From contig NC_088856.1 of the NCBI RefSeq assembly GCF_963853765.1, forward strand, positions 1,612,001 through 1,676,000: 64,000 bases of DNA, in the 5' to 3' direction. The position numbers and the translations under genes are program-made. This document shows, one piece after another, positions 19,555 through 57,824 of this stretch. This stretch comes from Magallana gigas. Taxonomy: Eukaryota. The first letter of the stretch is position 1. Every line of letters begins with the position of its first letter. Below the pieces are notes generated by a model. That model worked only from the letters and a program-made list of their open reading frames with translations. It did no database searches and had not been told where the DNA came from.

Positions 19555-20306
19555 GTGTGTGTTACAGACTTATAACTGCAGTATCTTTTCACACACTTTA
19601 CATGCAAAAAATATTTGGAATGTACAAATATAATGTTGTATCATGTATTATGTATAATTATTATGTATAACTTTCTTTAAATGTAATTACGATTAAGATT
19701 AAGTGCAAATCACACAATTTTGTACCCATATACCATTGTATATAAATTGTTTGAGTGAATAATGGTCAATTCATGTACATACAGCTGTCAAGATGGTATT
19801 AGATGTTATAACTTAGGGTTGCTTTACACAATTTACTAAAAAATGTCAATTACAACGGGTACTGCAAGAAATTAAACTTTTATTTTGCATAAGTTTAATT
19901 TTTTATTCTGCTGCTCATTTACACATAGAATATATCTTAAGCTGAAGTCTATGTATATATAACCTGCTTGTCATTTTCGATTGCTTTTTATTTAAGATAA
20001 ATGAGATTAGATAAATCGGATAAAATATTAACTTCACGGATAGTTCAACAACAACTAATTCCCGGTTTATATACAAAATGACAAATTTATACAAGGATGT
20101 CACAGAAAAAAACGGCTTTATTAGTCTATCTTTTTCAAACCCCGAGTGTACCTGTACTGTTTGGGTCGCAAACTCTCTTGTTCGGTATTTTATTCAATAC
20201 AATGGAACTACGACCAAAAAGATGTAGGAGCAACTAGTACTGTCAGATTTTTATTTATGTACCTGGTAACTACATATCATTGAAAACCTTAGGCTATTTT
20301 AAGCAT

Positions 20307-20316
20307 GGGAATTTCC
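20307..20316. promoter_or_regulatory. NF-kB/Rel consensus site in cGLR2 intron 1
   Basis: GGGAATTTCC, at the position homologous to 3531. Confidence 0.5.
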
Positions 20317-20728
20317 CTTTTACGGGTATTGATCAACTTTCATTTTGTTTTAACTTCCACTCAAATCTTGTGACTATAGTCAGGAACATAGTGCAATATT
20401 GTAAAAGTGAACTATTTATTATAAAAAGAAATATTTGAAACGTCGGGTGCCACCTGTGTCATATCATTGAAAACTTTATTTGAAAAATAATTCTATACTG
20501 TTCAGGCTAATCTATTCTGTCTATATTTCATATATTATTTATTTATTATATTAATTCTTATTCAAAAAATATTCTATTTTTTTTTCTAATCTATTCTACC
20601 TGTCTACATTTGAAATATAATATAAGATTTTATACACTTACATTCCTTGGTGGAGAGACTCCATTTTAAGGTGAACAATGTTTATGCTATTTATAGACTG
20701 GTAATTTTCAATTTCATACATTGTACCC

Positions 20729-20828
20729 GAGGCGTATTCAACAGAGCGAGTTCTCTTAAGCGCTCGCCAAAAATCCCTTCACCCGTAACACAAATTTTGG
20801 CGAGCACTCGCTTTGCTGAACACGCCTC
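20729..20828. repeat. Stem-loop (23-bp imperfect arms) about 65 bp upstream of the cGLR2 start codon; homologues at 3924-4011 and ~28234 (truncated)
   Basis: gaggcgtattcaacagagcgagt ... actcgctttgctgaacacgcctc, with an inner gctcgccaaaa/ttttggcgagc stem. Confidence 0.7.
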
Positions 20829-22877
20829 TTTACCCTCTACACTTTAACTTCGACTGGGGTTGTCTCTATTGACTCAGTCAGAAATAGATTTCATTAAATA
20901 TGTTATTTTTATTAAAGCTAAAAACAGCAATTATTTTATAACTTTTTAATTAAAATTAAACAGTTAGAGATAGTCAAATAAAAAAAAATTTCAGGCGCCC
21001 CAACGGCTTTAAACGTTACATTTATAAACTTCAAAAATATTTCACATAAATTTGACTCAAAGAAATCTCGAATAATGAAGATTAATGGCTTCAGTTTAAT
21101 CAAAATAGAGATATTTTAACAGAACAAAATTGGTTTACTTGTTCGTTGCTATGTTTCAAAATTATTGCTTTTTAATACTCATAAATGATGCAAAATACTT
21201 CTGTTTAATGTTATTTTTTAATTTTTTTTATTTAATAATTGTTAAGACTAGAGCAGGAATTTTAATTTCTTTTAAAGTGATAAATTTGCAAGATACATTT
21301 TTAAAAAGTATTTATTCTTCAGCAATTCTTCGGCTTTTTCACGACGTCAAAAAATAAATCATTCAATACTGATATTTACATTCCCTTACTGATGAAATCA
21401 ATTACCGTTATTTACTTAGATAAATCAATACCAATTGCAGATCACAGAGGGAGTAAATAAGTAACAGCAAGAACAGCTGTTTTATAAAAGCGGTTTAAAC
21501 TGGTTATCACATAGACTGTTGAGTTGAGATCGATGAGCATGAAAATACATGTACATGTATAATCCATGGAAAATAACTCTTCAAATGAAATCAACTTTTT
21601 GTTGAATAATTGTAAAAACATAGTGTTTTGACAATATGTATGAAATATATTTTTTAACCGACAACATAGAGATCGATATCACTGTTTGAGAACTACTTAT
21701 TATATGTAATTTACTTGTAAATTTATATGCAGTGATAAGTTGTTGCATTTAGAGGCATTTTTAAACATCACAAAATTAAAGATCACAGAATTTAATGGAA
21801 ATGTAAATATCACATTTTGTGTATCAGATAACAGATGCAAATATTTTTCAAGTTTGAAAACACAGCTGAAAACGGACAAATATGAGATGATAATACAATT
21901 ATAACAAATTTTTAAGACATTCCATTGGATGGAAAACAATTTGTACATGTCATTACTTATTCTAACATTGATCTTATATTTTTTATATATAAAGAACAGT
22001 TGATCTTTTGACATGATATACCTTCCCCAAGTACTATATGGCTGTATTTGTGAGTCTGACTCTGAATACTTCAGATAGAACAGGATTAAGGTACAAGTTG
22101 TCGTGTATGAATGGTTTGACTGACTAGATGATTAAAGGCTTTTGTTCTTTTTTATTCCCAGGGATTACCATGCAGATTTCAAGGAAGAATTTGCTGCCCA
22201 GCGAGCTGCTCGAGGCAAAGGTCGAAAGAAACCGGACTCAAAGACAAAAGAATAACTGTGTAGCATAATCTGTCTAGTAAACTGGTAATATGGTCTGTGT
22301 TGAGAAGGATTCTTTGTTATAATGTGATAATTAGAAGCTTGTTTCATGTAGCCCTCTGCTTATCCTTTTGAACATTTTGATTGTAAAATAAAGGAGATCT
22401 ATATAACTTAATACGTTACCAGTACTGGAGTTGTTATTCAAGCCTTTGATCTCAAGATAATTTGTGATGACAATTTTGGATCTAGAAATCATTTTACAAA
22501 GGGTATCAGTCTTTGAGGCGGAATTTCTGACAAAGATAAGACTAGAATCACGTTTTTCTTATCAAATTATTAGATGAAAAATGAAAATATTAACTTTTAA
22601 CATAGGAATATATAAAGAAAAATGCTGGAACTTGTGTGAAAACACAGGCTGTGCAGATTCCAAAACATTATTCCCTTGAGAAAAACGGGATCACAAGAGG
22701 GGAGTGGGGGTTAAAAAAGTGGAGAAAAGTTTTCTCTTAAATACTAACACAACAAAAGGGGCTTCATGTTTACCATAGTATTATGTGGATAAATATTTTA
22801 ACTGTTTGTGCAAGATAGACTATTAAAGTTTCAAGATATTTTGAATTTGATACTGTAATGCTTATTTGATCGGCTAT

Positions 22878-41647: not shown

Positions 41648-44600
41648 ATGTCAGATTTCTTTCAGTATTTGGAGGACCATATTTATGTAAGAAATATTCC
41701 GTTTATAGATATTTATAACATACGTTGAGTATGAAGTGTAACGTAGCTTTGTAACTTGAAAATCAACAGTAATGTACACAGTCCATACAATGTACATGTA
41801 TGTATGTAAATTTTTTTTTTTATAACAGTGTAATGCACATTCTCACAACTTCAGGGGCCCTGAGTCCGTGACATGGCCGTGACTGACCACGAGTGGACTC
41901 AGGACCGCTAACGTTTAGAGGATGCAGTTTATAAAGGGATGAATTTACATTACGCATGAAATTTCCCAGATCATTCATTTGATGAAATTTTGATCTATAA
42001 CACACATAAAATTTCTTTTCATATGATAACTCCAGATCCCAATTCTAGTCGGCTTGTTTGTGTTGTGTCTGATCGTCCTCCTGATCTGGTGGTTATGTAG
42101 GAGAAACAGGTAATTGTAGATATTACTCAGTGTCACAGTGTAACATTACATGTAGAAAACACAGAAAAGCTATAGTCTGTCCCAAGTTATTGCTTCCATC
42201 AATTTTTGACGATTTTTAATAAAAATACACATACCTGTGAAAGAAATACAATTGAAATCGATGAAAGGGAATATATCCAAGGTATCTTCATTGAACAATT
42301 ATCCCTTTTCAATCATAGAATTTCACAGGAACGAAAACAATTTTCTAACGGAGATTTATAATGGGAAATGTTTACATCTTTTCTCCATTCGGAATACACT
42401 CGGAATACATCGCACAATTTTTTAACATTATCATCCGGGCTTATTAATGGCTGATGCAATGCAAAATCTCCGTAGACTTTCAATTTTTGGATGTGTATTG
42501 AAACCTGAAGCGGTAGAGGGGGCGTTTCAAAACAGATAATCTGGACATTTTTCATATTAGTGGATGAACGTAGTTTGAGCACAAAGGTATTTACTATTAT
42601 TGAAATATCAAGCAAAAAGTGGTGGAAGCATAAACTCGGGACAGAGTATAGCATATCTACATTACTGTTGTGTTTTTCTGTTCGGCAGAGAGCGGTACCT
42701 TTACCAACCACTGAACACTCAGGATGTGGCTCTATATGACCGAATGTACAGCAACCAGAAACAGGCTGCAGAGAAAGAACAGGGTGAGTCAAAAAGTGTT
42801 ATAGCCTGGTAACAGGGAAAATACCGGTACAGGGTGAGTCAGAAATTGTGATAGGGAAAGTATACTATAAGGTGAGTTACAATCATGGTTAAAAATAACA
42901 GAAAAATACAGGGTGATAAATAACAATGAAAGTATTAAAGGGTTTGTAAGAAATTGTGTCGACAGAGAAAGTAAAGGGTGAGTTAATAGAATGTTTATTA
43001 GAGAAATACAGGTTGGGGTAAAAAATCAGGACAACAGGTAAAGTATCCTATATGAGTTACTGACTGGCAATAAAAGAACAAAGTGAATCAAAAGGCAGGA
43101 CAGGTAACATGAAATATGAAGTGAAAATAAAAATTGTGAGGTAACAAAAAGTACAGGGTACATTAGAAGTTCATGTTCTATTAATGGTATCTACTTCTGC
43201 AGGATTGTAAGGTGACACTACGCTGTACATGTACATGTATTTACTGATATTTGAAGTGCTTACTGCTATGTCACCAATGTGTATCATTGTATGCCTTGAT
43301 TGTAGATAGTACAAAACATGGAATATCAAACACTGTCCTTTTTGTTTGACGTTGATTTTAATCTTCTCTGTAGAAGCGACCTGGATGAATGCCCAGTACT
43401 ACCTGAGGTCTCACCCCCAGTTCAACAGACTGAAGCAGCTCCCTCAGCTAGGTAACTGGCTCTTTACAGGTTTACATCTAGGTTTTGATCACATTGACAT
43501 AGTATTGGATTATTGATAGTATGATCAATATTGCTAGAACATTGTGCAACTCTATCCCTTGAATCAATCTCTCTTCCTTGGATAATTGATCGTATTATAA
43601 TCAGTTTTTCTGACCTTGACAGGAAGTAGGTCAGAGAAGCAGTGGTTCAAGGTCAGTGATCAGAACAGATCGGAGCACCTGCTGACTACACTCCCCCGCC
43701 CTGATAAGTGTCTGCTGGATCTGGACACTAGAACCAGGAAGATGCTAAACAGTCTGTTCCAACTCCTGAAGGTAGGTGTATAGCACCAGTCTCTGTCTCT
43801 TACAGACAAATGTATTCAGCATTGAAAATACTGCAACATATATGCTGTAGATTCTAATTAAATGTGAGGCTTTGATATCCACATAATATCCTGAAAAGCA
43901 CTATTATGTAATGGATTTAGAGATCTTGCTTTTATTTTTCTGACAGGTAAATGAAATTCAATAAAAGTTTAGGATTTGCGATTTCATATTGCTACAATTT
44001 GATCCAAAACATTGGAATCACAGAATTAAGTTCTTGTGTACCGTCTGTTATTGATCCCATTACTTTCTGTTGTAGCATCCGTACATGTTCGCCATGACTG
44101 AGTTTGACTATGTGCTAGATCAGAATTTTGTGGTCATCATTCAGCCCCTCTGTCCAAAGGGGTCGCTCAAAGACGTTATATATCAGGTGACTCTCTTATC
44201 TATACACAGTACCGTATTTTCCCGACGATTAGTCGGTATTTTTTTTCTCTGAAGCAGATCACCCAACTTATTTGTCCACAGCGATTAATTTTCGTGATTT
44301 AAATGTTGATTATCTGAAAAAAATATAATACTAATGACATTTGAGGAATATTCGCGACGACAAGGGTTTCGCGAACCTCATGAAAATTTCTTGCACGCGA
44401 ATGAAAGTAGCTGCTGTCATGTACAGTGTGTTGATCAATGTTTGTGAGCCTGCCTACTTTGTCACATGGCAATAAGACACACTGTAATAATGTTCCTGTG
44501 ATGTTTTCAGACAAACTATGGTACACCATGGGTCGAAAAATATAGAGTCAAAGGGAGAGGTCTAAGATTGGAGCAAGTGGCTCGGTACGGAAAACAAATT

Positions 44601-44998
44601 CTACAGGTAACTACTTCTCTCCCTTTCTATTTCCTCTGTCATTGTACATGTATATAATTTGTAAAATTCAATGTGAAAGTGAAAGTCCAAACATTATTCT
44701 TTACAGTACATAAAGCATTAGCTTTGCAACAAGTGACATTGTAACTTTTACGATTAATGTTGTTACCTTAAGAATAAATGACTATTTGCCATTGTTACTT
44801 ATACAATTCAGAATATGTTACATTGAATTAATTGTTACCATTACACTGTTTGATACGTCTACTTAATTAACAAAAACATTGCAGGATATGTTAATGTTAT
44901 AATCCATGAAACATTTTAGGATGTTTGACCTTAAATATGACTTACATTTATTATACCCCCGCTCCGAAGGAGAGGGGGTATACTGTTTTACCCTTGTG

Positions 44999-45034
<36 letters not shown>

Positions 45035-48000
45035 CGTAACAAAAATTTCTGTCGCATTTATCTCAGCAACTATTTATCGCAGATGCTTGAAATTTTAACA
45101 CAGTGTTTGTTAAGGCATGCCATATCGTGGGATATTTTTTTGTACCAATCGGACGCCAACTTCCTGTTAAATGACGACTTTGTTTATTTTTAGCAAAACT
45201 TTTCAAACAAATTTTTGTCAAAGAATTCTCAGCAACTGTTTATCGCAGATGCTTGAAATTTTTACACAGTATTTGTATAGGCATGCCATATCGTGGGATA
45301 TATTTTTGTACCAATCTGACGTCAACTTCCTGTTTAATGAGTACTTTGTTTATTTTTAGCCAAAATTTTCAAACAAATTTCCGTCAAAGATTTCTCAGCA
45401 ACTATTTATCGCAGATGCTTGAAATTTTAACACACTATTTATATAGTCATGCCATATTGTGGGATATATTTTTGTATCAATCGGACGTCAACTTCCTGTT
45501 AAATGATAACTTTGCTTATTTTTGAACCAAAATTTTCAAACAAATTTTTGTCAAAGATTTCTCAGCAAATATCTATTGCAGATGCTTGAAATTTTTACAC
45601 AATATTTGTATATGCATGCCATATCGTGGGATATATTTTTGTACCAATCGGGCGTTATCTTCCTGTTCAATGACGACTTTGCTTATTTTTTAACCAAAAT
45701 TTTCAAACAAATTTTCGTCAAAGATTTCTCAGCAACTGTTTATCGCAGATGCTTGAAATTTTAACACACTATTTGTTTAGGCATGCCATATTGTGGGATA
45801 TATTTCTGTACCAATCGGATGCCAGCTTTCTGTTAAATGTCGACTTTGCTTATTTTGCATATTCACATCAGAGCGGGGGTATCACTAGTGAGCATTGGCT
45901 CACAGATATCTTGTTACTTTTTTATTCCTCATCATATTACCATTGTCAATTTGCAATTCATCATTGCAAATTTTCCTCAAAATGTTACCTTTACAAATTA
46001 TGAGTTAGTATAAAAGCATGACATCACAAGTTATCTTTACAATCTGTGATAAATGTCTTATTACCATTGCCATATATTGTATGATATATTACCTGTACTA
46101 TGCATAATAAATTTTAATAATTACTTTTACAGTTTTCGATGTTACTTTCATATAGAAACTTCATGTTACATGTATAATATATTGCAGGGTCTCCTGTTTA
46201 TGGAACAGAAAGAGTTTCCTCCCCATGGACACCTGCACACAGGGAATATCATGGTTAACAATGGAGTGTGCCAGTAAGACAATTCACTCATAGATAACTT
46301 ATCATCTTTTCTTGTTGTATTCCTCTCTTTGGAAAGATACTGGTATCTATTATTATGTTTTTCTGAATTTGTTTTTCTTTCTTTAGAATCGCAGGTTATG
46401 AGAATACATTTATTGGTTTGAAATCCAAGCTCTTGGCGATGGCCAGGAGAAAGTTAAAGGATCAACCGGAGGCTATTGACGTCCTCTCGTTTGGTAAGGT
46501 GCCAGAATGAATTACAGTAAAACATGGTTATAGCAAACATACTTACAATGAATAAACGCTACAATGAAGTGACACGTTGTAAACTTGACAGATATATTGA
46601 ATTACACTTAAAACAAAGCAAATTGGCCGGTCCCTGGCACTCGTTATAAATGTGTTTTACAGTAATGGCTTTTGAGATGTGATACCTATAATTTTTTTAT
46701 AAGAATTTCAAAATACCAGTAGATATACTTGTAATTAATTATGATGATATCTAGGTTACATATTTTACAAGGCCTGTTACCTTTGATTTACCTGTGACAT
46801 TTTCTAGGTTACATATTGAATAAGATGCGGTACCTTATATATTGGTCAGAAATTGTATAAGATTTGGTATCTGTAATTGCCTTTGATGTTTTCTAAGTCA
46901 TGTATAGTGTGGTGTGTGTACTTATATACTTGTTCCTTTGATTTACCTATAACACTTCGTAGGTTACATTTTGTAGAGATGTGGTACCTGTAATTTAGCT
47001 ATGGCAATTTCTAATGCATATTATAGTATAGTATAAGGTGTGTACCTATATATACCGGTACCTGTACCTGCATCTAAGATTTACTTTTGATATTTCTAGG
47101 TCACATTTTGTACGAGATGTGTGTCGGGACAGAACTTGACTCCCCCCACCCTCAGCCTCATCACCTTAACATCATCAACAACCCAGCTGTGGTGTCAGTG
47201 AGTCACCTTATTTAATCATTTTTGTTATCAGGTTTGTTTGTAGCATAACTTTAAAGTCCCATCCGCTGGTAAAGGAGCCATTATATTGGTCAACCAAATA
47301 TTGTCATATGCAAAAAGAATTGAACAACCATATTAAAGAAATTTTGACTTTGACTCTACAGTGTAAAAATTTAAAAAAAATTGTCCATATTCAAGCAATA
47401 GGTGCATGTTCTCACCTTGATGTTCAGTTGGTTTGTTTTTTTTATATAATTTATTGTTTTTGATCCATTACATATCAACATTAAATTACATTTGTAAATC
47501 AAGTCATCATAAACTACACACACAAGTATACTTCTCTCTCACACAAATACATGTACAATAGTGGTAAGTGGTCACTTTGCTTTAAAAAGATAAATGAATC
47601 AGAAAAATATTTAAAAAATACAAGAAATAACATAAATGAGACAAATTTAATATTTTTTCCATGAAAACCGTAATTGTTTGAAATTGTTCAGCCTTTAATA
47701 TTTTTTTTAAGATAGCAGCATATTTTTTTCTGTATCATGATTTTTTTTTTATTGGCTGAATAATCCAAAAAATTTGGGTGATGTTCAGTTAGTCCTCAAT
47801 GACTATCTGCATCAATTTATAATAAGATGTGCATTTAGTAAATGTAGAATTGTGTATCAATAATGACTTAAGCTAAATAAGCTTTTCACTTTGATATGTT
47901 AGCTATTGTGTATCAATTATGACCCATCATGGATTAGCTTATCACTTTGATCTGTTAGCTATTGTGTATCAATTATGACCCATCATGGTTGATCACTTTG

Positions 48001-51000
48001 ATCTGTTAGCTATTGTGTATCAATTATGACCCATCATGGATTAGCATTTTACTTTGATCTTCACACACAAGGTAACCAACCCAAGCTACCCACTAATCAC
48101 CCAAAGCTGGCCTATCTGACCAATTAAAGGGATGGATCCACCAATCATTGACAGGCTTATTAATTGATTGGACAAATTAACCAATCATAACACAGTTAAG
48201 ACTTTCACAAGCCAATGAAATTTTTTGTTTGCAACCCAAGCTGAAATAAATCAGAATCCAGGCCTATATAAAGACCCAGCAAGCTGGCTGGTCATCATTC
48301 ACCCATTGTGATCCAATCTTACCTATCACAGTGCTATTAATTACCTTCAATATAATTCTTCATTAAGTGTACAAGTATATTTTGTGCATTTGTTGATTAG
48401 TGTGTTGTGTGTTACCAAAGTCCTCTATCAATGTGAAAAGGTGTTCTAGTGAAATCTTAGTGAAAAAGTGCTTAAGTGTCAATAGTGCATTAGTGTGCTT
48501 CAGTGTCTGTTCAGTGTCAGTGTAGTGATTCAGTGATCCACCATGGCTTCTTGTTCATCCTCCCCTGCCATCACCGTCAACTTCAGCACCACTCTTGAGG
48601 ACATCATCAAGGCCACCATCTTTGACGACGCCCCACCCACCCCTGAACCCTCCACCAGCCCAGTCAACACCTGCGTAGACACCAGTCAAGCAGAGACCAG
48701 ATTCGATGAGTGCCTCACCTCCCTCTTCAGTGACCATCCCACACCAGAGAAATCCCACGACCTTCACTCCGACCTCCACCTTGCTCTTCAGTGTCTTCCA
48801 CCGACCAGTCCAAAGAAGATATTCAGTGACAGCACCATCTCCTCCACAGAGATCTTCACTGCTCTCAAGTCCATCTTCCGCTCAGAAGCTGACTCATCCA
48901 CTCCCTCTGTGCTCATCAAGTCCGTCCAACCAGAGATTTCACCAGCCGACCGTGAACAGCAACTTCTGCACAGATTCAAGACCCTCCGTTCCTTCCATCC
49001 CCAGGAGATCAACGACCTGTCTTCCTTCTTCAAGTACCAGAGTGCCCAGGTGGAGACTGACCGCTACTGTGCCCTTCATCAGAACTCCAACCAGCCCCTC
49101 CACATCAGAGAAAGCATCAACCAACACTACAACATTACCCACCACCGCATCATGGACCGTGTGGAGAGCAGTCTTCAGTTCCTGGAGGACAACCTCGCCA
49201 CACCTCAACCCATCCAGACCGTCCCCCCACCCCAGGGCAACATCCGTAGCAGACCGTCCCTGTCCCAGAAGGCTGTTCGGCTGATGGAAGAGTGGTACTA
49301 CAGTCACCGAGATCACCCCTACCCACCCCATCACATCATCCAGGACCTGGCCAGGAGAGGAGGAGTCAAGGAGGAACAGGTCAAGAAGTGGTTCTCCAAC
49401 AAGAGGAACAGAAGCCGGAGGTCATCAGGGGTCAACAAGAGGAGGTCAACCGGTGTCATCAAGAGTGTGCCCTGCTTCTGGTGAATGTGCTCTGTGATAT
49501 CTGTGTGTGCTGAGTCTGTGATGTGATTGTGCAAATCCTCAGTGTGACTCCTGTTTGTGAATGAGACAGTGCTTTGGGGTATATTAATCTGATGTTGGTG
49601 CTTTTGGATATCCATATGAGTCTGTGATATGTGGTTTGTGTAATCCTCCAGTTAGCTGTGTTTGTATATGTGCTGTTCATGTGTTTGCTTTGTTTGTTAT
49701 ATTCTTCAGTTCAGTGCTATACGTCTTACATTGATTTTTATATCATCAAATTTTGTGAATTATCCCCATTGTTCATTAGTTGGGAATTAGTTGTGATTAT
49801 TTAGTGCTCTTTTGTAATTTGTTGTTGTTGAACAGTGGTTATGAACCTTGCAGATTTTTGTCTATTGATGTAGATATGTAATTAAATAAAAGTGCTTGCA
49901 TTGTTAATATATACTAATATATTTCTTGTATTGTTGTTTTCAATAAACCAAAAATATAAAATAATGGAAGTGTCTTGTTTAAATTTGAATCAAAAGTCTT
50001 TATCATGATAAAACTAGACAGAAAGGAGATATGAAAAACAAACAGAAAAAAACAGAAAAAATAGAAATATATTTATCAATTTTTTCAAAAAGAAATTTTA
50101 ATTTCTTTGAAAAAGAATTTCCTAAGAAATGTATATTCTTAGGCAAGTAGTTTATATTAACAAAGCATTAATAGATTCATTGAAACTTAATAAAATTCTG
50201 AAACTGTTATATTATCAATGTCATTTAGAGAGAATTGCATAAAATCTTCTTTTGGAAGGTATGCATTTTTGCAGAAATTTCTGTTGGACTTATGTCCTCT
50301 TTTTGATAAAGTAGTTTGTTCTCTTTGAAAACTGTCAAATATGTTCATGCTATTAAATTACTCAATAAATATTCTAAATTTTTTAAGCATAATGATTTAT
50401 TGATCTTAAAAGAAAACACAAATCCAGGAAAGTTTTAAAAGTCACTCCTTTGACTGCTTGAGGGAAAATAATGAAAAGCATTTTAACTGTAATAAGATAT
50501 TGTGTAACAAACTAATACACTTTTTCACTTTGATCTATTAGATATTGTGAATCAATTATGACTCATTATGGATTAGCTTTTCCCTTTGATCTGTTAGCTA
50601 TTGTATATCAATTACGACCCATCATTAAAAAGCTTTTAACTTTGATCTGCTAGCTATTGTGTATCAATTATGACCCATCATGGATTAGTTTATCACTTTC
50701 ATCTGTAAGCTATTGTGTATCAATTATGACCCATAATAAATTAGCTTTTCACTTTGATCTGTTAGCTATTGTGTATCAAAAATGACCCATCATGGATTAG
50801 CTTTTCACTTTCATCTGTTAGCTATTGTGTATCAATAATGACCCATCATGGATTAGCTTTTTACTTTGATCTGTTAGCTATTGTGTATCCATAATGACCC
50901 ATCATGGATAAGCTTTTCACTTTCATCTGTTAGCTATTGTGTATCAATTATGACCCATCATGGGTTAGCTTTTCGCTTTGATCTGTTAGCTATTGTGTAT

Positions 51001-54000
51001 CAATTATGACCCATCATGGATAAGCTTTTTACTTTGATCTGTTAGCTATCGTGTATCAATTATGACCCATCATGGATTAGGTTTTTACTTTGATTTGTTA
51101 GCTATTGTGTAATATTTACATTCTACTGTGTTTTTCCATTAAATTTTGTGATCTTCAAATGCCTCTAAATGCAACAAGTAGTCAAAGGTCAAATTGACCA
51201 GTTTTATTTTGATGTCACAAATGTTGAATGCTGTAAACTGCAACGTCACAAGCGAAAATCAAAGGTTGTAGCTAATCACTTTGATCCTCACACATAAGAT
51301 GACCCCACCAATGTTATACCCTTAGGTGGCAGGGGACAGTTTTTTTGATACAATTCATTGTAGCCAAGGGATGCATGTCTTCGGAACTCTGTAACTAGAA
51401 TTTCCTCAGTTCCCATTCAGCACAAATACCTTTAATTCACTCTTTATAAGGCCAATCACCAATTTCTGAAGAAAATTACTAATCAAAACCTGTAAAATTC
51501 TCTACATACTGGTTTTTATGAGATTTTGACCCTTTCATAATTTGCTAATTTTTCATGATTTTTCAGCTTTTTAGACCTCCCCCAGCTAATTCCCTGCAGT
51601 GGGTTGACCTTCCGTACCGCGTGCATGTTGCACTATCACATGTCAGAAACTTACCGCTGTATAGTTTACAATGTCCCATCCACCTACTTTTCGTGTTATT
51701 TTACCTCCCGTCTGTAACTTGCAATTTCACTATGTAAAGTCAGCACAACAGTCATAGCCGCAGGTTTCGCATTTTACTTCCGATTCTCATGTACCTAACA
51801 TAAGGGGCCTACATATTGCATATCAATTTCAACAAGAGACACCCCTCTAACTAATGATAATCATTAAAAATCATTTCATGAATTTTAGCAACACTCATAA
51901 GCCTTCAAGTACAGCAACTCTCAATTTTACAGAAATATTGACGGGTACTTTATTCGAAACTGTCCCTTGCTACCTTAGTCACCTAAAGCTGGTCCATGTA
52001 ACTTTGACATCCAATCACAATCCAGGATCTCCAGCATTTATTAATATACTCTTGTAGAACCAAATAATGAAGTTATTCAAATTTTAGTTTATATAATAAC
52101 CCTGCAAACACACATTGTGAACAAAATTACCTATCACATTACAATGGTACACCCTCCAGTTAAATCTACATATTTATAAGTTCAGAAGTAAATGTTGTGA
52201 ACTTAATTAGAAGTGTGTTGCTGTCCTTTCTAGCTGCAATAATATAGCCCTCTCCAATTGCAGCTAGGTACTTTCAAGTGATGATGTTACAGTCTTTGAT
52301 TTTATCATAGGATTTTATAGTAATTGATTTAAAACTGCACTCTGTCACACTCCATACATGCTTAATACAGGTACATGTATACATCAGAGTTGCAGAGTAA
52401 ATTATATATGATCTGTCAGCCACTCAGGCCTGTTTGATTATCATCACAATTATACTTAAACTTATAAAAATACATTTTGTTTATCAACTAGTTCCATACA
52501 GTTGCGAATGTAAAACTCGCCAATGCGAAATGTCACAAAATGACAAATGATGGACAAACCATTGATATACTCTGAAATAAAAATCTATGTTAAGAAATGG
52601 CTGAGGAAGGTTATGATTTCACTGTTGAAATAAAAAAATTACCGTATCTAAAATGCTTTTGTAGACCTATGCGGTAGGAAAAATAAAACTTATTGGAAAT
52701 TTATTATTAACTGAGCGATTGTAAGGGGATTCTAATTCAAAGTGGACTTTCAAGAAGGAAATTTCTAAAAAAAAAAAAAAAAAAAAAAAAAAGATTTCAA
52801 TCGTTGGGTTAGAATCAAAGATAGCAACAATTCAGATTATCTTGAGAGGCTTGCCAACAATGTTAGGTAATTATAGAAATGAATATGTGAATAAAATTAA
52901 AAATCTTAATAATTATTGTTTTAATTTCAGTTTCGATGACTGTTGATGAGTATCGTTGTGTTGTCGTATGACTGTTGATGAGTATTGTTGTGTTGTCGTA
53001 TGACTGTTGATGAGTATTGTTGTGTTGTCGTATGACTGTTGATGAGTATTGTTGTGTTGTCGTATGACTGTTGATGAGTATTGTTGTGTTGTGGTATCCA
53101 TGACTTGTCCTTCCTATGAGCTGTCCATTCCGTGACTTGTCCTTTCTATGAGCTGTCCATTCTGTGAGTTGTCCATTCTGTGAGCTGGCCATTCTGTGAG
53201 TTGTTGCAGTGATGATTTTTAGTTAGCTGTCCATTCTGTGAGTTGTCCATTCTGTGAGCTGTGATACAATACTTTGTAAAAATTGGTCCGGGGGGGGGGG
53301 GGGGCAGATATTTGACCATATGAAATATAGTCCTTTCAGAGATATGTATATATTAAAAACAGATGGAACAAATTGTTTTGGGAACATTCAACTGATTTTA
53401 TTTCATTGTAAATTAGTAAAACACATATGACAAGAGATGGGAAAAATCTTAAATAATATGAGATATTTTGGAAAATATTGGTTTTAGCATTCTATTATGA
53501 AAAGAAAGTTATAACAAGAAGATTGAATAATATTTGTTATTTATCTGCATTTTAATTTAAAGATACAAAATGTCTTGAATTATACTCTGTTCCAGGAATA
53601 AATCAAGAAAGAGTGTCAAAAAAAAATTCAAATATTGTGTGAAAACTATCTTTAATGTGGAAAATTGTGATCTTTGAAAAGCTTGAAGTAATGTATTACA
53701 TTATTGGTAATGTGTATTTTGATTTGAGTGATGTTATTTAACGTTATGACTACTTAACATACATCATTTTCATTCCACCTTCTGGTTGTGTGTGTTGGAA
53801 GGGGAGAGGGCGGTTGTGTGCAGTCCCTCAACTGGAAGACAAGGGGTTCAATGGACTGTGGATTGGGGATCTCTTTGTCAGCTTTGAATAGATTACTGGT
53901 TTACCAATTGTACCATATTCAATGATAAAGAAACAATATAATACAGTCATTATGATAGCACTTGTTTTATACATGTTATGTGTTATGCAACAATATATAC

Positions 54001-57000
54001 ATCCAACAATATAGGAAAAACCCTGAGAGAAAAATCAAAATATGATAACAAATAGTGAAGGCATTTCACAATATGTGTCACAGAAAATGCCAGTTGTAGC
54101 ACAGCACTCTGAAAAATTTTACAAATACAACAGACATATAGAACACAGTGATAGATATAACATAGCACTAGCACATAAAAAACACAGCACACTACAGCAT
54201 TGCACAATTGCATCACATAGAAGACATTTTAATATCACAGAGGACTGATACAAGTTGATTATCACATCTTATTCACAATTAGAGGGCACACTGAAGGATT
54301 GCACAAACACATCACATATCACAAACTCATATGGATATCCAAGAGCACTAACATCAGATGAATATCCCAAAGCACTATCACAAGCACAGTACACTGAAGC
54401 ATCGCACAAACACATCAGATATCACAGACTCAGCACACACAGAAATCACAGAGCACAATCACCAGAAGCAGGGCACACTCTTGATGATACCGGCTGATCT
54501 TCTCTTGTTGACTCCTGATGACCTCCGGCTTCTGTTCCTCTTGTTGGAGAACCACTTCTTGACCTGCTCTTCCCTGACTCCTCCTTTCCTGGCCAGGTCC
54601 TGGATGACGTGAGAGGGTGGGTAGGGATGATCTCGGTGACTGTAGTACCACTCTTCCATCAGCTGAACGGCCTTCTGGGACAGGGATGGTCTGCTACGGA
54701 GGTTGCTGTTACTGGAGGTCTGTGGCTGTGGGGGGACGGTCTGTGTGGGTTGGGGTGTGGGAAGGTTGTCCTCCAGGAACTGAAGACTGCTCTCCACACG
54801 GTCCATGATGCGGTGGTGGGTGATGTTGTAGTGTTGGTTTATGCTCTCTCTGATGTGGAGGGGCTGGTTGGAGTTCTGGTGAAGGGCACAGTAGCGGTCA
54901 GTCTCCACCTGGGCACTCTGGTACTTGAAGAAGGAAGACAGGTCGTTGATCTCCTGGGGATGGAAGGAACGGAGGGTCTTGAATCTGTGCAGAAGTTGCT
55001 GTTCACGGTCGGCTGGTGAAATCTCTGGTTGGACGGACTTGATGAGCACAGAAGGAGTGGATGAGTCGGCTTCTGAGCGGAAGATGGACTTGAGAGCAGT
55101 GAAGATCTCTGTGGAGGAGATGGTGCTGTCACTGAAGATCTTCTTTGGACTGGTCGGTGGAAGACACTGAAGAGCAAGGTGGAGGTCAGAGTGAAGGTCG
55201 TGGGATTTCTCTGGTGTGGGATGGTCACTGAAGAGGGAGGTGAGGCACTCGTCGAATCTGGTCTCTGCCTGACTGGTGTCCACGCTGGTGTTGAGTAGGC
55301 TGCTTGAGGGTTCAGGGGTGGGTGGGGCGTCATCAAAGATGGTGGCCTTGATGATGTCCTCAAGAGTGGTGGTGAAGTTGATGGCTACGGCAGGGGAGGA
55401 TGAACAAGAAGCCATGGTGGATCACGGAATCGCAAACTTGACACTGAACAGACACTGAAGCACACTAATGCACTATTGACACTAAAGCACTTTTTCACTA
55501 AGATTTCACTAGAACACCTTTTCACAAACACATTGATAGAGCACTTTGGTAACACACAACACACTAATCAACAAATGCACAATATATACTTGTACACTTA
55601 ATGAAGAATTATATTGAAGGTAAATGATAGCACTGTGATAGGTAAGATTGGATCACAATGGGTGAATGATGACCAGCCAGCTTGCTGGGTCTTTATATAG
55701 GCCTGGATTCTGATTTATTTCAGCTTGGGTTGCAAACAAAAAATTTCATTGGCTTGTGAAAGTCTTAACTGTGTTATGATTGGTTAATTTGTCCAATCAA
55801 TTAATAAGCCTGTCAATGATTGGTGGATCCATCCCTTTAATTGGTCAGATAGGCCAGCTTTGGGTGATTAGTGGGTAGCTTGGGTTGGTCACCTTGTGTG
55901 TGAAGATCAAAGTAAAAAGCTAATCCATGATGGGTCATAATTGATACACAATAGCTAACAGATCAAAGTGAAAAGCTAATCCATGATGGGTCATAATTGA
56001 TACACAATAGCTAACAGATCAAAAAGAAAGGTATTGGTAATAATTCATAATTGATACACAAGTACCAGATCAAAGTGTAAAATACCAACAATGTTAGATA
56101 CAGGTAACATAATGATGATATGCAATTTAAATAAAGAGTAAGTAGTGATTTAAATTAATTTTTTATCCAATGTGAGTTGCAGTTCAAAATGGACAGTTGT
56201 GCAACACTGAAAAACACACTAAAGCTTTTATTCAAAATTAGTATAGATTTTTAAACATTTCTGTTTAAGATGAATCAAGTTTTGCACAATGTGAAATTAG
56301 ATCTTTTGAAATAATTCCCATTGCCTGGGCTGGTGTTCAGAGAAAGAGGTCACCATTTTCAGACTTAACATTAACACCCATTGGTCACTTTATCTTTGTA
56401 GCTTTTTCTTGTCAGTTATTATAAATTAAACACCAGTATCAGAGTGATGTAGAAACCATTCTGTGAAAATCCAATTTATTCCCAAAGATCAATGAGATTG
56501 ACGAACAAGGATGCTGATTAAGAGTGCCATCTTGAGTACATGCTGTTGGTGCAAGTTTTGATGATAGCATTGACATAGAACATGACATTCAACCATCTGT
56601 GAAAATCCTTATTATGTATGATAGAAGATTCCTATTATATAGATTAATGATACTGATGAACAAGAATGTTTATAAAGAGTTTAATCTTGTGTGTTGTATG
56701 TGTTAAGCTTTATTGATATTATATTTTAGGACCTAATTATTATTACATAACTATTATTATATACTACCTATTACATATAGAAGAAGATTCCTATAATTTA
56801 GACTGATGAACAAGGATATTGGTTGAGAGTGTCATCTTGTGTGTTGTAGGTGCTGAACTTCATCTTTGGTGAAGACACGGATGGAAGATACCCTTCTCTA
56901 ACAGAGGTGAGACTCTTTAATGCCAATTGTGATGGAATGATTTAACCATGTATTTCATTCCTATCAAAATATTAAATGTTCCACATAAAACGGTTTGTCA

Positions 57001-57824
57001 CTTGAGAAAAATATGTAGTATTGGAAAATTCAAACTGAATTGTCATTTCAGCCTTTTGGTTATAAAATTTATCAAACCTAAATGCCATGTCAAGAAAATT
57101 ACTGGTAATTACAATTTCTTTCATTTCAGATATCTGAGCTGGCTTTCTTTCAATCAGTTAACTTGGTGGAGATGAGCAAGTTCAATCCCTCTAAGGTTGT
57201 TCATTTTATGCATGAAATCCAGACATTTTATATTTCATGAAGTAAGCTTATAAATGAACTTCTTTCCCCAATATTTTGAAAGGTTAAAATTATGAAACTT
57301 GAATTTGCAGATTTATCTATCAAAAGAAATGAAAAAAGCCATAAAAACAGTCAACTCTGGTAAACCCGTAAAGTGAGTACCTATAAAACAACCTATCAAC
57401 TGAATCTGTTAAATATCAAATTCAGGCTTTACATGTTTTAGAATGTTTATTACGGTACACTCCTGACTTTATTACTCCGTTACAACTTAAAATTTACAGA
57501 AAGAAAACAAAGAGAACAACCACAAAGGCAGAAAACATGGAGAGCAAGTCCAATGTTCCAAGTGGTGGATCCAAGCCCCCCTCTCCTCCTCCCCCTCCTG
57601 GTGGCCCCCCTGTGGTGACCACACCCCCACCACCCCCACCTCCACCTCCTGTCTTCAGTCCAGGGGGACCCCCTCCGGCTCCCCCGGCCCCGGCCCCGCC
57701 CCCACCCCCTCCCCCACCCTCCTCGGGAGGGCCCGGGGGTAGGGCAGCCCTGCTGGGTGACATCCGGTCAGGGATTTCCCTCAAGAAAGCTGTTACTAAT
57801 GATAGAAGTGCACCCAAAGTGTAA
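41648..57824 (+). CDS. Slob: Slowpoke-binding protein / PXK-like pseudokinase with N-terminal transmembrane segment, poly-Pro tract and C-terminal WH2
   Basis: 14 GT-AG exons, phase-consistent, 1443 nt / 480 aa: 41648-41686, 42036-42109, 42689-42783, 43374-43451, 43623-43771, 44076-44186, 44511-44606, 46188-46273, 46387-46493, 47100-47197, 56850-56906, 57130-57195, 57311-57372, 57500-57824. Motifs HPYMF, GSLKDVIY, YGKQILQGL, HGHLHTGN, DVLSFGHILYEM and RAALLGDIRSGISLKKAVTNDRSAPKV match the PXK/Slob family; no PX domain. The symbol is family-level. Confidence 0.85.
44949..45915 (+). mobile_element. Non-autonomous Helentron/DINE-like element carrying ~166-bp satellite monomers (Cg170-like)
   Basis: 5' ttataccccc and a (GTCT)n tract; about 5 monomers with period 166-167 (markers at 45075, 45241, 45407, 45574, 45741); 3' gcgggggtat plus the hairpin gtgagcattggctcac. 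The Cg170 name is inferred from the period and structure. Confidence 0.75.
47880..48060 (+). repeat. 56-bp minisatellite directly upstream of homeobox copy A
   Basis: Unit (t)cactttgatctgttagctattgtgtatcaattatgacccatcatggattagcttt; about 3 copies. Confidence 0.9.
48061..48300 (+). promoter_or_regulatory. Core promoter of homeobox copy A
   Basis: Several CCAAT boxes, TATATAAA at 48265-48272 and an Inr-like TCATTC about 30 bp downstream; near-identical inverted copy at ~55660-55905. Confidence 0.75.
48543..49484 (+). CDS. Intronless TALE-class homeobox gene with PADRE motif (copy A), nested in Slob-like intron 10
   Basis: 313 aa, Kozak ccaccATGG. The C-terminal homeodomain has the TALE loop (SHRDHPYP) and helix 3 QVKKWFSNKRNR (Ser50). 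SPADREQQLL lies at residues 133-142. Confidence 0.92.
   Translation: MASCSSSPAITVNFSTTLEDIIKATIFDDAPPTPEPSTSPVNTCVDTSQAETRFDECLTSLFSDHPTPEKSHDLHSDLHLALQCLPPTSPKKIFSDSTISSTEIFTALKSIFRSEADSSTPSVLIKSVQPEISPADREQQLLHRFKTLRSFHPQEINDLSSFFKYQSAQVETDRYCALHQNSNQPLHIRESINQHYNITHHRIMDRVESSLQFLEDNLATPQPIQTVPPPQGNIRSRPSLSQKAVRLMEEWYYSHRDHPYPPHHIIQDLARRGGVKEEQVKKWFSNKRNRSRRSSGVNKRRSTGVIKSVPCFW
50520..51110 (+). repeat. 56-bp minisatellite, about 10 copies, in the spacer between the homeobox genes
   Basis: Same unit as 47880-48060; period 56 (e.g. 50761 to 50817). Confidence 0.95.
52938..53260. repeat. 32-bp minisatellite (5 copies) followed by short tgtccattctgtgag repeats
   Basis: Unit gactgttgatgagtattgttgtgttgtcgtat at 52938-53097. 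Confidence 0.9.
54459..55415 (-). CDS. Intronless TALE-class homeobox gene with PADRE motif (copy B), inverted paralogue of copy A
   Basis: 318 aa. Identical to copy A over residues 45-218; 5 substitutions in the homeodomain and a 5-aa linker insertion. Confidence 0.92.
   Translation of the reverse strand: MASCSSSPAVAINFTTTLEDIIKATIFDDAPPTPEPSSSLLNTSVDTSQAETRFDECLTSLFSDHPTPEKSHDLHSDLHLALQCLPPTSPKKIFSDSTISSTEIFTALKSIFRSEADSSTPSVLIKSVQPEISPADREQQLLHRFKTLRSFHPQEINDLSSFFKYQSAQVETDRYCALHQNSNQPLHIRESINQHYNITHHRIMDRVESSLQFLEDNLPTPQPTQTVPPQPQTSSNSNLRSRPSLSQKAVQLMEEWYYSHRDHPYPPSHVIQDLARKGGVREEQVKKWFSNKRNRSRRSSGVNKRRSAGIIKSVPCFW
55660..55905 (-). promoter_or_regulatory. Core promoter of homeobox copy B
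   Basis: Reverse complement of 48061-48300 with very few mismatches; TATA at 55699-55692. Confidence 0.75.
55906..56050 (-). repeat. 56-bp minisatellite (inverted) directly upstream of homeobox copy B
   Basis: aagctaatccatgatgggtcataattgatacacaatagctaacagatcaaag x2 plus a degenerate copy. Confidence 0.9.

What the first reader, a model, noticed from the sequence alone, without database searches (positions are those of the whole stretch)
47198..56849. Inverted pair of intronless PADRE-TALE homeobox genes nested inside one intron of a Slob-like gene
Seen: exon 10 (ends 47197, ...NPAVVS) and exon 11 (starts 56850, VLNFIF...) of the Slob-like gene join in frame across a 9.65-kb intron. That intron holds two complete transcription units (CCAAT/TATA/Inr promoter, Kozak ATG, intronless ORF, 3' UTR) facing each other as ~1.7-kb inverted arms around a ~4.6-kb spacer. 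Established: TALE homeodomains have the three-residue loop seen here. From recollection, lophotrochozoan-specific TALE expansions including an oyster PADRE-box group have been described and are expressed in early embryos; this should be verified. Inference: this is a young palindromic amplification of an early-embryo transcription factor sheltered in a host intron. The architecture recalls multicopy zygotic-activation homeobox genes such as DUX, and I do not know of it being described as a nested palindrome.
Basis: partly seen in the sequence, partly recalled or inferred. Interest (0 to 1): 0.82.

Follow-up and report, generated by a model that had tools for sequence, protein, structure and literature searches.

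The report
Nested inverted pair of oyster TALE genes
Two intact copies of a known early-embryo oyster transcription-factor gene (PADRE-type TALE homeobox) sit tail to tail inside one intron of a Slob-like gene. The genes are already described, but the old, conserved nesting, the inversion, the copy-to-copy homogenisation and a conserved upstream motif array seem not to have been described.

Summary
Host exon 10 (ends 47197) splices to exon 11 (56850-56906) in RNA contigs. The 9,652-bp intron holds two intronless TALE homeobox ORFs: A at 48543-49484 (+) and B at 54459-55415 (-). They lie on 1.8-kb inverted arms that are 92% identical, around a 4.6-kb spacer.

The genes are not new. Their homeodomains match Cgi_TALE12 and Cgi_TALE11 of Paps et al. 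2015 (TALE clade VI, the founding PADRE proteins; SPILE-A/C). A third copy on another chromosome is Cgi_TALE13.

"Young palindromic amplification" is only partly right.
- The same intron holds two direct copies in Crassostrea virginica, Saccostrea cucullata and S. echinata, so the nesting is old and the inverted orientation is derived.
- Copies cluster by species (within-pair dS 0.10-0.14, between genera about 0.55; omega about 0.2).
- A and B share a 263-nt identical promoter tract.
- The spacer holds a decayed third unit broken by a transposon.
- Together these point to gene conversion plus birth-and-death turnover.

New here:
- A conserved promoter with CCAAT boxes, a TATA box and an invariant leader.
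- A locus-specific upstream tandem array of CTTTGATC (TCF/HMG-type) motifs, present in four oyster genera.

Interest is moderate.

The parts
47087..47197 (+). Host (Slob/PXK-like) coding exon 10, ending ...NPAVVS, donor GTGAGT
   Evidence: tblastn of transcript-derived P0031. RNA contigs join it to exon 11.
47198..56849 (+). Host intron of 9,652 bp that contains the TALE units
47849..48060 (+). 56-bp tandem array upstream of A (about 3.5 units), each unit carrying CTTTGATC(T) and a CAATTA core
   Evidence: In this genome it occurs only at these TALE loci.
47883..49652 (+). Left arm of the inverted repeat (array, promoter, 5'UTR, ORF A, about 170 nt of 3' flank)
   Evidence: 92% to the right arm
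48061..48320 (+). Promoter of A: CACCC-like box, CCCAAGCT, CCAAT boxes at 48120/48141/48181/48212, TATATAAAG at 48265-48273, invariant leader ATTGTGATCCAATCT at 48305-48319. The 263-nt tract 48075-48337 is identical to B.
48543..49484 (+). ORF A, 313 aa, PADRE region about aa 120-216, TALE homeodomain aa 235-297. Counterpart of Cgi_TALE12.
50522..51111 (+). Orphan 56-bp array (10.5 units) belonging to a decayed third unit (D)
51269..52220 (+). Remnant promoter and 5'UTR of unit D (51269-51320, 51964-52002, 52109-52220; 68-75% to the A, B and C. virginica promoters). It is split by a transposon and no coding sequence is left.
51321..51978 (+). 655-bp high-copy repeat (98-99% identical to thousands of genomic copies) inserted into the promoter of D
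54290..56081 (-). Right arm of the inverted repeat
   Evidence: The spacer/arm junction is bridged by an independent WGS contig.
54459..55415 (-). ORF B, 318 aa, antisense to the host. Counterpart of Cgi_TALE11. B-specific RNA contigs are present.
55904..56081 (-). 56-bp array upstream of B (about 3 units)
56850..56906 (+). Host coding exon 11 (VLNFIFGEDTDGRYPSLTE), spliced on to 57127

Best explanation
The interval is intron 10 of a Slob/PXK-like gene, which encodes a membrane-anchored kinase-like protein with a WH2 motif. It houses a small, evolving cluster of one spiralian-specific TALE homeobox gene family: TALE clade VI, also called SPILE-A/C, the founding PADRE-domain proteins. ORF A corresponds to Cgi_TALE12 and ORF B to Cgi_TALE11.

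Each is a self-contained, intronless transcription unit. Each has an upstream tandem array of HMG/TCF-type CTTTGATC motifs, a promoter with CACCC and CCAAT boxes and a TATA box, a 5'UTR of about 240 nt, and an ORF under purifying selection. The encoded proteins are early-zygotic transcription factors of the kind that specify blastomere identity in molluscs. That function is taken from the literature, not tested here.

The nesting is old. The orthologous intron holds two copies in Crassostrea and in two Saccostrea species, always in the host's orientation. In this lineage the second functional copy is inverted, which gives a convergent palindrome-like pair. A third, direct unit in the spacer has decayed after a transposon hit its promoter.

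The arms are kept alike by arm-to-arm gene conversion on top of birth-and-death turnover. A dispersed copy of the same 1.7-kb unit, Cgi_TALE13, lies on another chromosome.

Shown: the structure, gene identity, host splicing, conservation of the nest, selection on the ORFs, conserved promoter elements, and presence of B and C sequence in RNA libraries.
Inferred: gene conversion, the order of events, early-embryo function in this species, and any role of the motif array.

The confidence of 0.78 is for the core claims (gene identity, nesting, derived inversion, old nest). The balance between conversion and turnover is less certain, at about 0.55.
For: Structure and domains.

Identity with named genes: the homeodomains printed in the supplement of PMC5322547 differ from A and B by two residues each. 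Cgi_TALE12 is flagged there with an extra PKc_like domain, which is what a model fused to the host kinase exons would look like. Copy C is 99.7% identical to C. gigas K1RAG1 and matches the Cgi_TALE13 homeodomain.

PADRE: the literal motif and the conserved block are present. The PADRE-only AlphaFold model (pLDDT 82) matches limpet Spiralian-TALE-C at TM 0.75, E 5e-5.

Host splice.

Conserved nesting, with both copies on the + strand between the exon 10 and exon 11 orthologues:
- S. cucullata L018.
- S. echinata L021.
- C. virginica L017. The chimeric models P0022 and P0023 join the exon ending ...NKPALVS to the TALE ORF.

Concerted pattern: pairs cluster by species with 93-100% support. Within-pair dS is 0.10-0.14, against 0.35-0.40 between the two Saccostrea species and 0.54 between this genome and C. 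virginica.

Conversion: A and B differ at 5 of 380 promoter sites but at 48 of 942 CDS sites. They share a 263-nt identical tract (permutation p < 1e-4), while C differs at 98 of 380 promoter sites.

Selection: omega is 0.15-0.29 for all pairs.

Decayed unit D.

Promoter footprint.

Motif array: it lies 476-874 nt upstream of every copy in four genera, and in this genome only at these loci.

RNA:
- X40 contig 20 (604 nt) has 9 differences from B, against 35 expected for A or C. Its depth is about 25, against 0-7 in the flanking intron.
- Another contig in X40 carries the 3'UTR of C.
- No splice joints fall inside the unit.
Against: - Stage-specific expression of A and B in this species was not measured. 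In run X39 the B coverage (depth about 4) is no higher than the intronic background.
- A's own expression rests only on shared 31-mers in three RNA runs and one ambiguous contig.
- Species-wise clustering could come from repeated duplication and loss rather than conversion, and the decayed unit D shows that such turnover happens.
- Flanks are too diverged to establish positional orthology of individual copies between species.
- The A-B promoter identity could in principle reflect very strong constraint, although the promoter is only about 77% conserved to C. virginica.
- In Ostrea edulis the pair lies outside the Slob-like gene, so the age of the nest depends on the oyster species tree.
- The orientation of B was checked only through short WGS contigs, not long reads.
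Confidence: 0.78

Rival explanations
1. Young inverted duplication. B was created in the Magallana lineage by an inverted duplication of A. It functionally replaced the older direct copy, now the decayed unit D. The arms have simply diverged since then, with little or no gene conversion.
For: A and B are each other's closest relatives. A decayed third direct unit about 30% diverged from both lies between them. The arm boundaries are symmetrical, from the array to about 170 nt past the stop codon.
Against: dS of 0.14 is not young. The identity is strongly mosaic: 1.3% divergence over the promoter against 5% in the CDS and 8-24% towards the 3' end. Simple divergence does not predict that. The same within-pair dS (0.10-0.14) and species-wise clustering recur in three other species that have pairs in the same intron, which would need four independent duplications.
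Confidence: 0.25
2. Assembly artefact: a single TALE gene, or two alleles of it, was mis-assembled as an inverted pair.
For: Inverted duplications are a known long-read assembly error. No long reads could be examined here.
Against: The arms differ at 98 substitutions plus indels, including a 5-codon indel. The flanks are unique. An independent WGS contig bridges the junction between the spacer and arm B. Two distinct homeodomain types were adjacent gene models, CGI_10021477 and CGI_10021478, in the independent 2012 C. gigas assembly. Copy-specific words occur in runs from 12-13 studies. WGS depth over the arm is about twice that of the flanks when copies are allowed to co-map.
Confidence: 0.03
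3. One or both copies are non-functional relics, such as retro-copies or pseudogenes, that merely happen to lie in the intron.
For: They are intronless. A dispersed copy exists on another chromosome. A decayed unit lies next door.
Against: The duplicated unit includes the promoter and the upstream array, which a retro-copy would lack. The ORFs are intact and omega is about 0.23. The promoter is conserved across four genera. B-specific contigs are enriched over the intron background in an RNA library. Cgi_TALE11-13 are reported as expressed from egg to blastula (PMC5322547).
Confidence: 0.05

Closest known systems
Cgi_TALE11, Cgi_TALE12 and Cgi_TALE13 of Crassostrea (Magallana) gigas: TALE clade VI with PADRE domain (Paps et al. 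2015, PMC5322547); SPILE-A/C clade (Morino et al. 2017; PMC8524836)
   Same: The homeodomains are identical or within two residues. The literal PADRE motif is present. The family, the adjacency of TALE11 and TALE12, and the kinase-like domain contaminating the TALE12 model all match.
   Different: The papers classify the genes and give expression profiles. They do not describe the nesting in the Slob-like intron, the inverted orientation, the decayed third unit, concerted evolution or the promoter and motif array, as far as the searchable text shows.
Nested (intronic) genes of animals in general
   Same: Complete transcription units with their own promoters sit inside a host intron that is spliced out normally.
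   Different: Here a duplicated pair is retained in the orthologous intron across oyster genera, one member has become antisense to the host, and annotation pipelines repeatedly fuse the sense copy to the host.
Palindromes with arm-to-arm gene conversion (for example ampliconic palindromes of sex chromosomes); concerted evolution of tandem duplicates
   Same: Inverted arms each carry a gene, with tracts of identity (263 nt and 173 nt) inside otherwise diverged arms. Paralogues cluster by species.
   Different: The arms are short (1.8 kb) and only 92% identical, against more than 99.9% in classical palindromes. Conversion is patchy. A birth-and-death component is evident.
DUX/Dux-type multicopy intronless homeobox genes active at zygotic genome activation
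   Same: Lineage-restricted, intronless, duplicated homeobox genes active at or near zygotic genome activation (by the literature for this family).
   Different: TALE class with a single homeodomain, not double PRD class. There are 2-3 copies, not a macrosatellite array. There is no retrotransposition signature, because the promoter is copied with the gene. A role as a genome-activation driver is untested.

Membership tests
TALE-class homeodomain | Three-residue extension in the loop between helices 1 and 2 (63-residue homeodomain), matching the KN/TALE profile | tested here: met
   Pfam PF05920 Homeobox_KN at 39.9 and 41 bits against a cut-off of 24, full profile 1-40. The P-Y-P loop ...HRDHPYPP... 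is visible.
TALE-class homeodomain | Helix 3 recognition motif WFxNxR | tested here: met
   KKWFSNKRNR is invariant in all oyster copies.
PADRE-domain TALE (clade VI / SPILE-A/C) | Conserved region of about 87-90 aa N-terminal to the homeodomain (PADRE domain) | tested here: met
   The literal SPADREQQLL motif is present. The block aa 120-216 is nearly invariant among oysters and alignable to mussel, pearl-oyster and scallop proteins. The predicted three-helix fold matches limpet Spiralian-TALE-C at TM 0.75, E 5e-5.
PADRE-domain TALE (clade VI / SPILE-A/C) | Homeodomain groups with named clade VI members | tested here: met
   The homeodomains of A, B and C compare with Cgi_TALE12, Cgi_TALE11 and Cgi_TALE13 as printed in the supplement of PMC5322547, with 2, 2 and 0 differences. 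No clade-wide tree including limpet SPILE genes was built here.
PADRE-domain TALE (clade VI / SPILE-A/C) | Expression in cleavage or blastula stages | tested here: inconclusive
   B- and C-specific contigs are present in RNA libraries of unknown stage. Stage information comes only from the literature on C. gigas (PMC5322547) and a mussel (PMC8524836).
Nested intronic gene | Host transcript splices across the interval | tested here: met
   RNA contigs of two studies and the transcript-derived protein P0031 join 47197 to 56850.
Nested intronic gene | Own promoter and transcript independent of the host | tested here: inconclusive
   The conserved promoter elements and RNA coverage confined to 54348-55579 in X40 support it. 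The transcription start site, the polyadenylation site and the strand were not mapped.
Gene-converting palindrome | Inverted arms with near-identity maintained by arm-to-arm conversion | tested here: inconclusive
   The arms are 92% identical overall, which is not near-identity. A 263-nt identical tract (p < 1e-4) and a promoter divergence of 1.3% against dS 0.14 argue for conversion tracts.
DUX-like ZGA homeobox array | Double PRD-class homeodomain in a tandem macrosatellite | tested here: not met
   There is a single TALE homeodomain. The genome holds three close copies, two of them here.
Slob / PXK-like host | Kinase-like domain plus C-terminal WH2 motif; PX domain in vertebrate PXK | tested here: met
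   The orthologues carry PF07714 and PF02205 and are named slob2, slowpoke-binding protein or PXK-like. No PX domain is listed; the N-terminus is a hydrophobic anchor instead.

The most novel reading that the evidence does not exclude
The locus-specific tandem array of CTTTGATC(T) motifs, paired with a homeodomain-type AATTA core, is conserved upstream of every copy in four oyster genera. It may be the enhancer through which a maternal HMG-box input (beta-catenin/TCF or a Sox factor) switches on these first-wave zygotic TALE genes. The intron-sheltered pair would then be kept in two nearly identical doses by gene conversion over tens of millions of years. That would give a direct cis-regulatory link between maternal axial asymmetry and the spiralian-specific blastomere-identity factors.
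Probability: 0.2. Interest if true: 0.65.

Novelty: new member of a known kind. Interest (0 to 1): 0.42.

Why it matters
Spiralian-specific TALE genes are the best current candidates for the factors that give spiral-cleavage blastomeres their identities, yet their regulation and genomic dynamics are almost unknown.

This locus shows that one subfamily has lived as a pair inside the same host intron across oyster genera. It is homogenised within species, it turns over (one dead unit, one dispersed copy, one inversion), and it carries a compact, phylogenetically footprinted promoter and a motif array that can be tested directly in reporter assays.

It also explains recurring chimeric "kinase-homeobox" gene models in oyster annotations, and unannotated copies such as those in S. 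echinata.

It is not a new kind of element, and the genes themselves are already named.

Tried and rejected
- Exact look-ups of A, B and C found none of them in the 15-billion-protein collection, so database names could not be read off directly.
- The look-up of encoding contigs found nothing for P0002 or P0033, so the O. edulis host intron could not be inspected.
- The hypothesis that copy C sits in the orthologue of the Saccostrea TIR_2 host was rejected. Outside the TALE unit and its upstream array, tblastx found only short, low-scoring matches and no recognisable host exon. The nearest ORFs are carboxylesterase-like and PAP-associated. Translin, a neighbour in O. edulis, lies elsewhere in this genome.
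- Positional orthology of individual copies between the two Saccostrea species could not be resolved from the flanks.
- The PADRE domain had no Pfam hit beyond the homeobox at E <= 1. It had no usable ESM Atlas hit, no PDB sequence relative (best E 0.15) and no PDB fold match (best E 1.5). The whole-protein fold search gave only weak global matches to PBX and BELL proteins (TM <= 0.26). A relationship to PBC or MEINOX domains is therefore not shown.
- CTTTGATC arrays were sought upstream of nine other TALE paralogues in this genome and not found.
- The single read-laying run covered only the B side. A's transcript, the poly(A) sites and the strand could not be established. The polyA raw-read run X22 gave only 24 reads.
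- No canonical AATAAA was seen close to B's stop codon. A candidate for A lies at about 49885.


Full report
**1. The observation**

The interval contains an inverted repeat. The arms are 47883-49652 and 56081-54290, about 1.8 kb and 92% identical, and they are separated by 4,637 bp.

Each arm carries one long ORF. A is 48543-49484 (+), 313 aa. B is 54459-55415 (-), 318 aa. The two proteins are 92% identical and the genes are convergent. GC content rises from about 0.31 to 0.54 over both ORFs. Both proteins match Pfam Homeobox_KN and Homeodomain above the curated cut-offs.

The host exon ends at 47197 (|GTGAGT) and the next begins at 56850 (TTGTAG|). The intron is 9,652 bp.

**2. Host gene and splice**

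- A transcript-derived 478-aa protein, P0031, maps exon by exon onto 41648-57821.
- It reads ...NPAVVS-VLNFIFGED... across the interval, and by this mapping 47087-47197 is coding exon 10.
- Orthologues are named slob2, slowpoke-binding protein or PXK-like. They carry a weak kinase-like domain and a WH2 motif.
- In RNA contigs from two studies (X39, X40) the letters immediately before exon 11 are those of window 47158 onward, which is exon 10.
- The same contigs continue by a GT..AG joint from 56906 to 57127, and then to an exon at 57311.
- The host therefore splices across the interval.

**3. What the genes are**

- The best database hit is C. gigas K1RAG1, at 89-91% to A and B.
- The genome (564 Mb; the window is C4:1612001-1676000) holds a third close copy, C, at C5:56258701-56259654. 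C is 99.7% identical to K1RAG1.
- The supplement of Paps et al. 2015 prints the homeodomains of the oyster TALE genes.
  - A differs by two residues from Cgi_TALE12 (CGI_10021478).
  - B differs by two residues from Cgi_TALE11 (CGI_10021477, the adjacent model).
  - C equals Cgi_TALE13.
  - Cgi_TALE12 is annotated there with an extra "PKc_like" domain, which is what a model fused to the host kinase exons would look like.
- All three carry the literal PADRE sequence that gave the domain its name.
- These genes belong to TALE clade VI and the SPILE-A/C clade.
- The literature reports expression of TALE7-14 from egg to blastula in C. gigas. It reports zygotic onset at the 4-16-cell stage for SPILE-A/C genes in a mussel and a limpet. 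Unclassified TALE genes are among the first zygotically up-regulated genes in an annelid.
- The species is M. gigas or a very close relative. I could not determine which.

**4. Protein**

- AlphaFold models give a confident three-helix PADRE region: pLDDT about 90 in the full model and a mean of 82 in the domain-only model.
- The domain has no solved-structure relative by sequence or fold.
- It does match predicted structures of other spiralian TALE proteins, including limpet Spiralian-TALE-C (TM 0.75) and brachiopod proteins.
- A link to PBC or MEINOX domains is not shown.

**5. The nest is old and was originally a direct pair**

- In S. cucullata (L018) the exon 10 orthologue is at 392-493. 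TALE ORFs start at 2289 and 10001, both on the + strand. The exon 11 orthologue is at 11646-11702.
- In S. echinata (L021) exon 10 is at 8478-8579, unannotated TALE ORFs start at 10248 and 20009 (both +), and exon 11 is at 21848-21934.
- In C. virginica (L017) exon 10 ends near 7619 and two + copies start at 10001 and 18677 inside the host gene.
- Two RefSeq models in C. virginica (P0022, P0023) fuse ...NKPALVS to the TALE ORF.
- The flanking genes (an LRR/guanylate-kinase gene upstream, a BTB-Kelch gene downstream) are the same in the window.
- In O. edulis two direct copies lie elsewhere, next to RING and Translin genes. The Slob-like orthologue is on a different chromosome-scale contig.
- Saccostrea also has a further paralogue nested, in the sense orientation, in a TIR_2 gene.

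**6. History of the copies**

- The intron copies cluster by species in all four species, with 93-100% support.
- Within-pair dS values:
  - 0.139 for A-B
  - 0.096 in C. virginica
  - 0.144 in S. cucullata
  - 0.126 in S. echinata
- Between species, dS is 0.35-0.40 for the two Saccostrea and about 0.54 for this genome against C. virginica.
- All omega values are 0.15-0.29.
- One old pair homogenised by gene conversion is more economical than four independent duplications in one intron.
- Within the window the identity is mosaic.
  - The promoter differs at 5 of 380 sites, including a 263-nt identical tract at 48075-48337 (permutation p < 1e-4). A second identical tract of 173 nt lies in the central CDS.
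  - The whole CDS differs at 48 of 942 sites, and identity falls to 76-92% towards the 3' part.
  - Copy C differs from both at 98 of 380 promoter sites.
  - The promoter is only about 77% conserved to C. virginica, so constraint alone does not explain the A-B identity.
- Turnover also occurs. The spacer has an orphan 10.5-unit array (50522-51111). It is followed by the start of a third promoter (51269-51311), a 655-bp high-copy repeat insertion (51321-51978), the continuation of that promoter (51964-52002) and a 5'UTR-like stretch (52109-52220). All are on the + strand and 68-75% identical to A and B. No coding sequence is left.
- Two scenarios remain open. Either B is an inverted member of an old pair, or B is an inverted duplicate that replaced the dead unit D. 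In both cases the inverted orientation is derived.

**7. Regulatory anatomy**

- The duplicated unit starts in a 56-bp tandem repeat and ends shortly after the stop codon. The unit of copy C has the same limits.
- In this genome the repeat occurs only at these loci.
- Its core CTTTGATC(T), with a nearby (C/T)AATTA, recurs in 1-6 or more units 476-874 nt upstream of every copy in Magallana, Crassostrea, Saccostrea and Ostrea. The unit length differs between genera, 34 bp against 56 bp.
- Elsewhere in the 64-kb window the 9-mer occurs once. It is absent upstream of nine other TALE paralogues.
- CTTTGATC is the core of TCF/LEF-type HMG-box sites. That is established knowledge; its function here is inference.
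- Downstream, an alignment of nine promoters shows these invariant elements:
  - ACTTTGAT
  - a CACCC-like box
  - CCCAAGCT, twice
  - three CCAAT boxes
  - a TATA box
  - the leader ATTGTGATCCAATCT

**8. RNA evidence**

- Three RNA runs hold 61-63% of A's sampled words, and six RNA runs hold 29-48% of B's.
- Laid on 53900-57250, run X40 covers only 54348-55579 at depth 17-45, counting whole 112-nt bins. The flanking intron sits at 0-7 and the host exons at 18-22. No joints fall inside the unit.
- Contig 20 (604 nt) has 9 differences from B, against 35 expected for A or C. Another contig ends in the 3'UTR of C.
- In X39 the B-specific contigs, including B's 3'UTR, are present, but at the depth of the intron background.
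- The stages are unknown.
- B and C are therefore present as RNA-library sequence, enriched over background in one study. A's transcription and the developmental timing were not shown here.

**9. Verdict**

The "young palindromic amplification" reading needs revising: this is an old, conserved intronic nest with conversion and turnover, and the inversion is lineage-specific.

The genes are already described. The layout, its evolutionary behaviour and the conserved promoter and array are modest additions, and the regulatory hypothesis they suggest can be tested directly.

Noticed in passing
G000:C5:56258001-56259704 (L003; ORF 56258701-56259654 +): A third copy of the same 1.7-kb unit (array, promoter, ORF) lies on another chromosome. 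It is 99.7% identical to C. gigas K1RAG1 and corresponds to Cgi_TALE13. Its promoter and 5'UTR are 20-50% diverged from A and B although the CDS is 92-94% identical. It is transcribed: an RNA contig carries its 3'UTR.
   Followed up: partly
L019:10001-10945 and L020:10001-10927: Saccostrea echinata and S. cucullata have a further paralogue of this TALE gene nested, in the sense orientation, inside a TIR_2-domain gene. It carries the same upstream CTTTGATCT motif. No counterpart was found in this genome.
   Followed up: partly
P0022 and P0023 (C. virginica); Cgi_TALE12 in PMC5322547 supplementary table 1: Annotation pipelines repeatedly fuse host exon 10 to an internal AG inside the sense-oriented TALE ORF, giving 605-aa kinase-like plus homeodomain proteins. 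Whether such a splice exists in real transcripts was not tested. The equivalent AAG|GCC site exists in ORF A.
   Followed up: no
L021:10248-11198 and 20009-20956: The two intron-nested TALE genes of S. echinata are intact ORFs but are not among the called genes of that assembly.
   Followed up: partly
window 51321-51978: A 655-bp repeat is 98-99% identical to thousands of genomic copies. Many occur as direct pairs about 2.07 kb apart, which looks like LTR or terminal-repeat structure. It is evidently a recently active element, and here it lies inside the dead promoter of unit D.
   Followed up: partly
window 54460-55691, run X22: In a stranded polyA library the few reads over ORF B lie mostly in the same direction as reads on the host exons. 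That makes them antisense to B. The numbers are too small to interpret.
   Followed up: no
L013:4359-5771, 10001-11299 and 725-999 (-): The O. edulis copies sit in a 5.5-kb tandem duplication that is 94-99% identical. They carry a 320-440-nt insert in the variable N-terminal region that is annotated as an intron. They have 34-bp motif units. A partial inverted fragment of the gene lies upstream.
   Followed up: no
L018:12216-12458: S. cucullata has an orphan CTTTGATCT array downstream of host exon 11 with no TALE ORF behind it. This may be another relic of turnover.
   Followed up: no
window 52936-53262: Tandem repeats of period 32 and 16 nt lie in the spacer. They create the spurious 109-aa ORF at 52863-53192 (-).
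   Followed up: no
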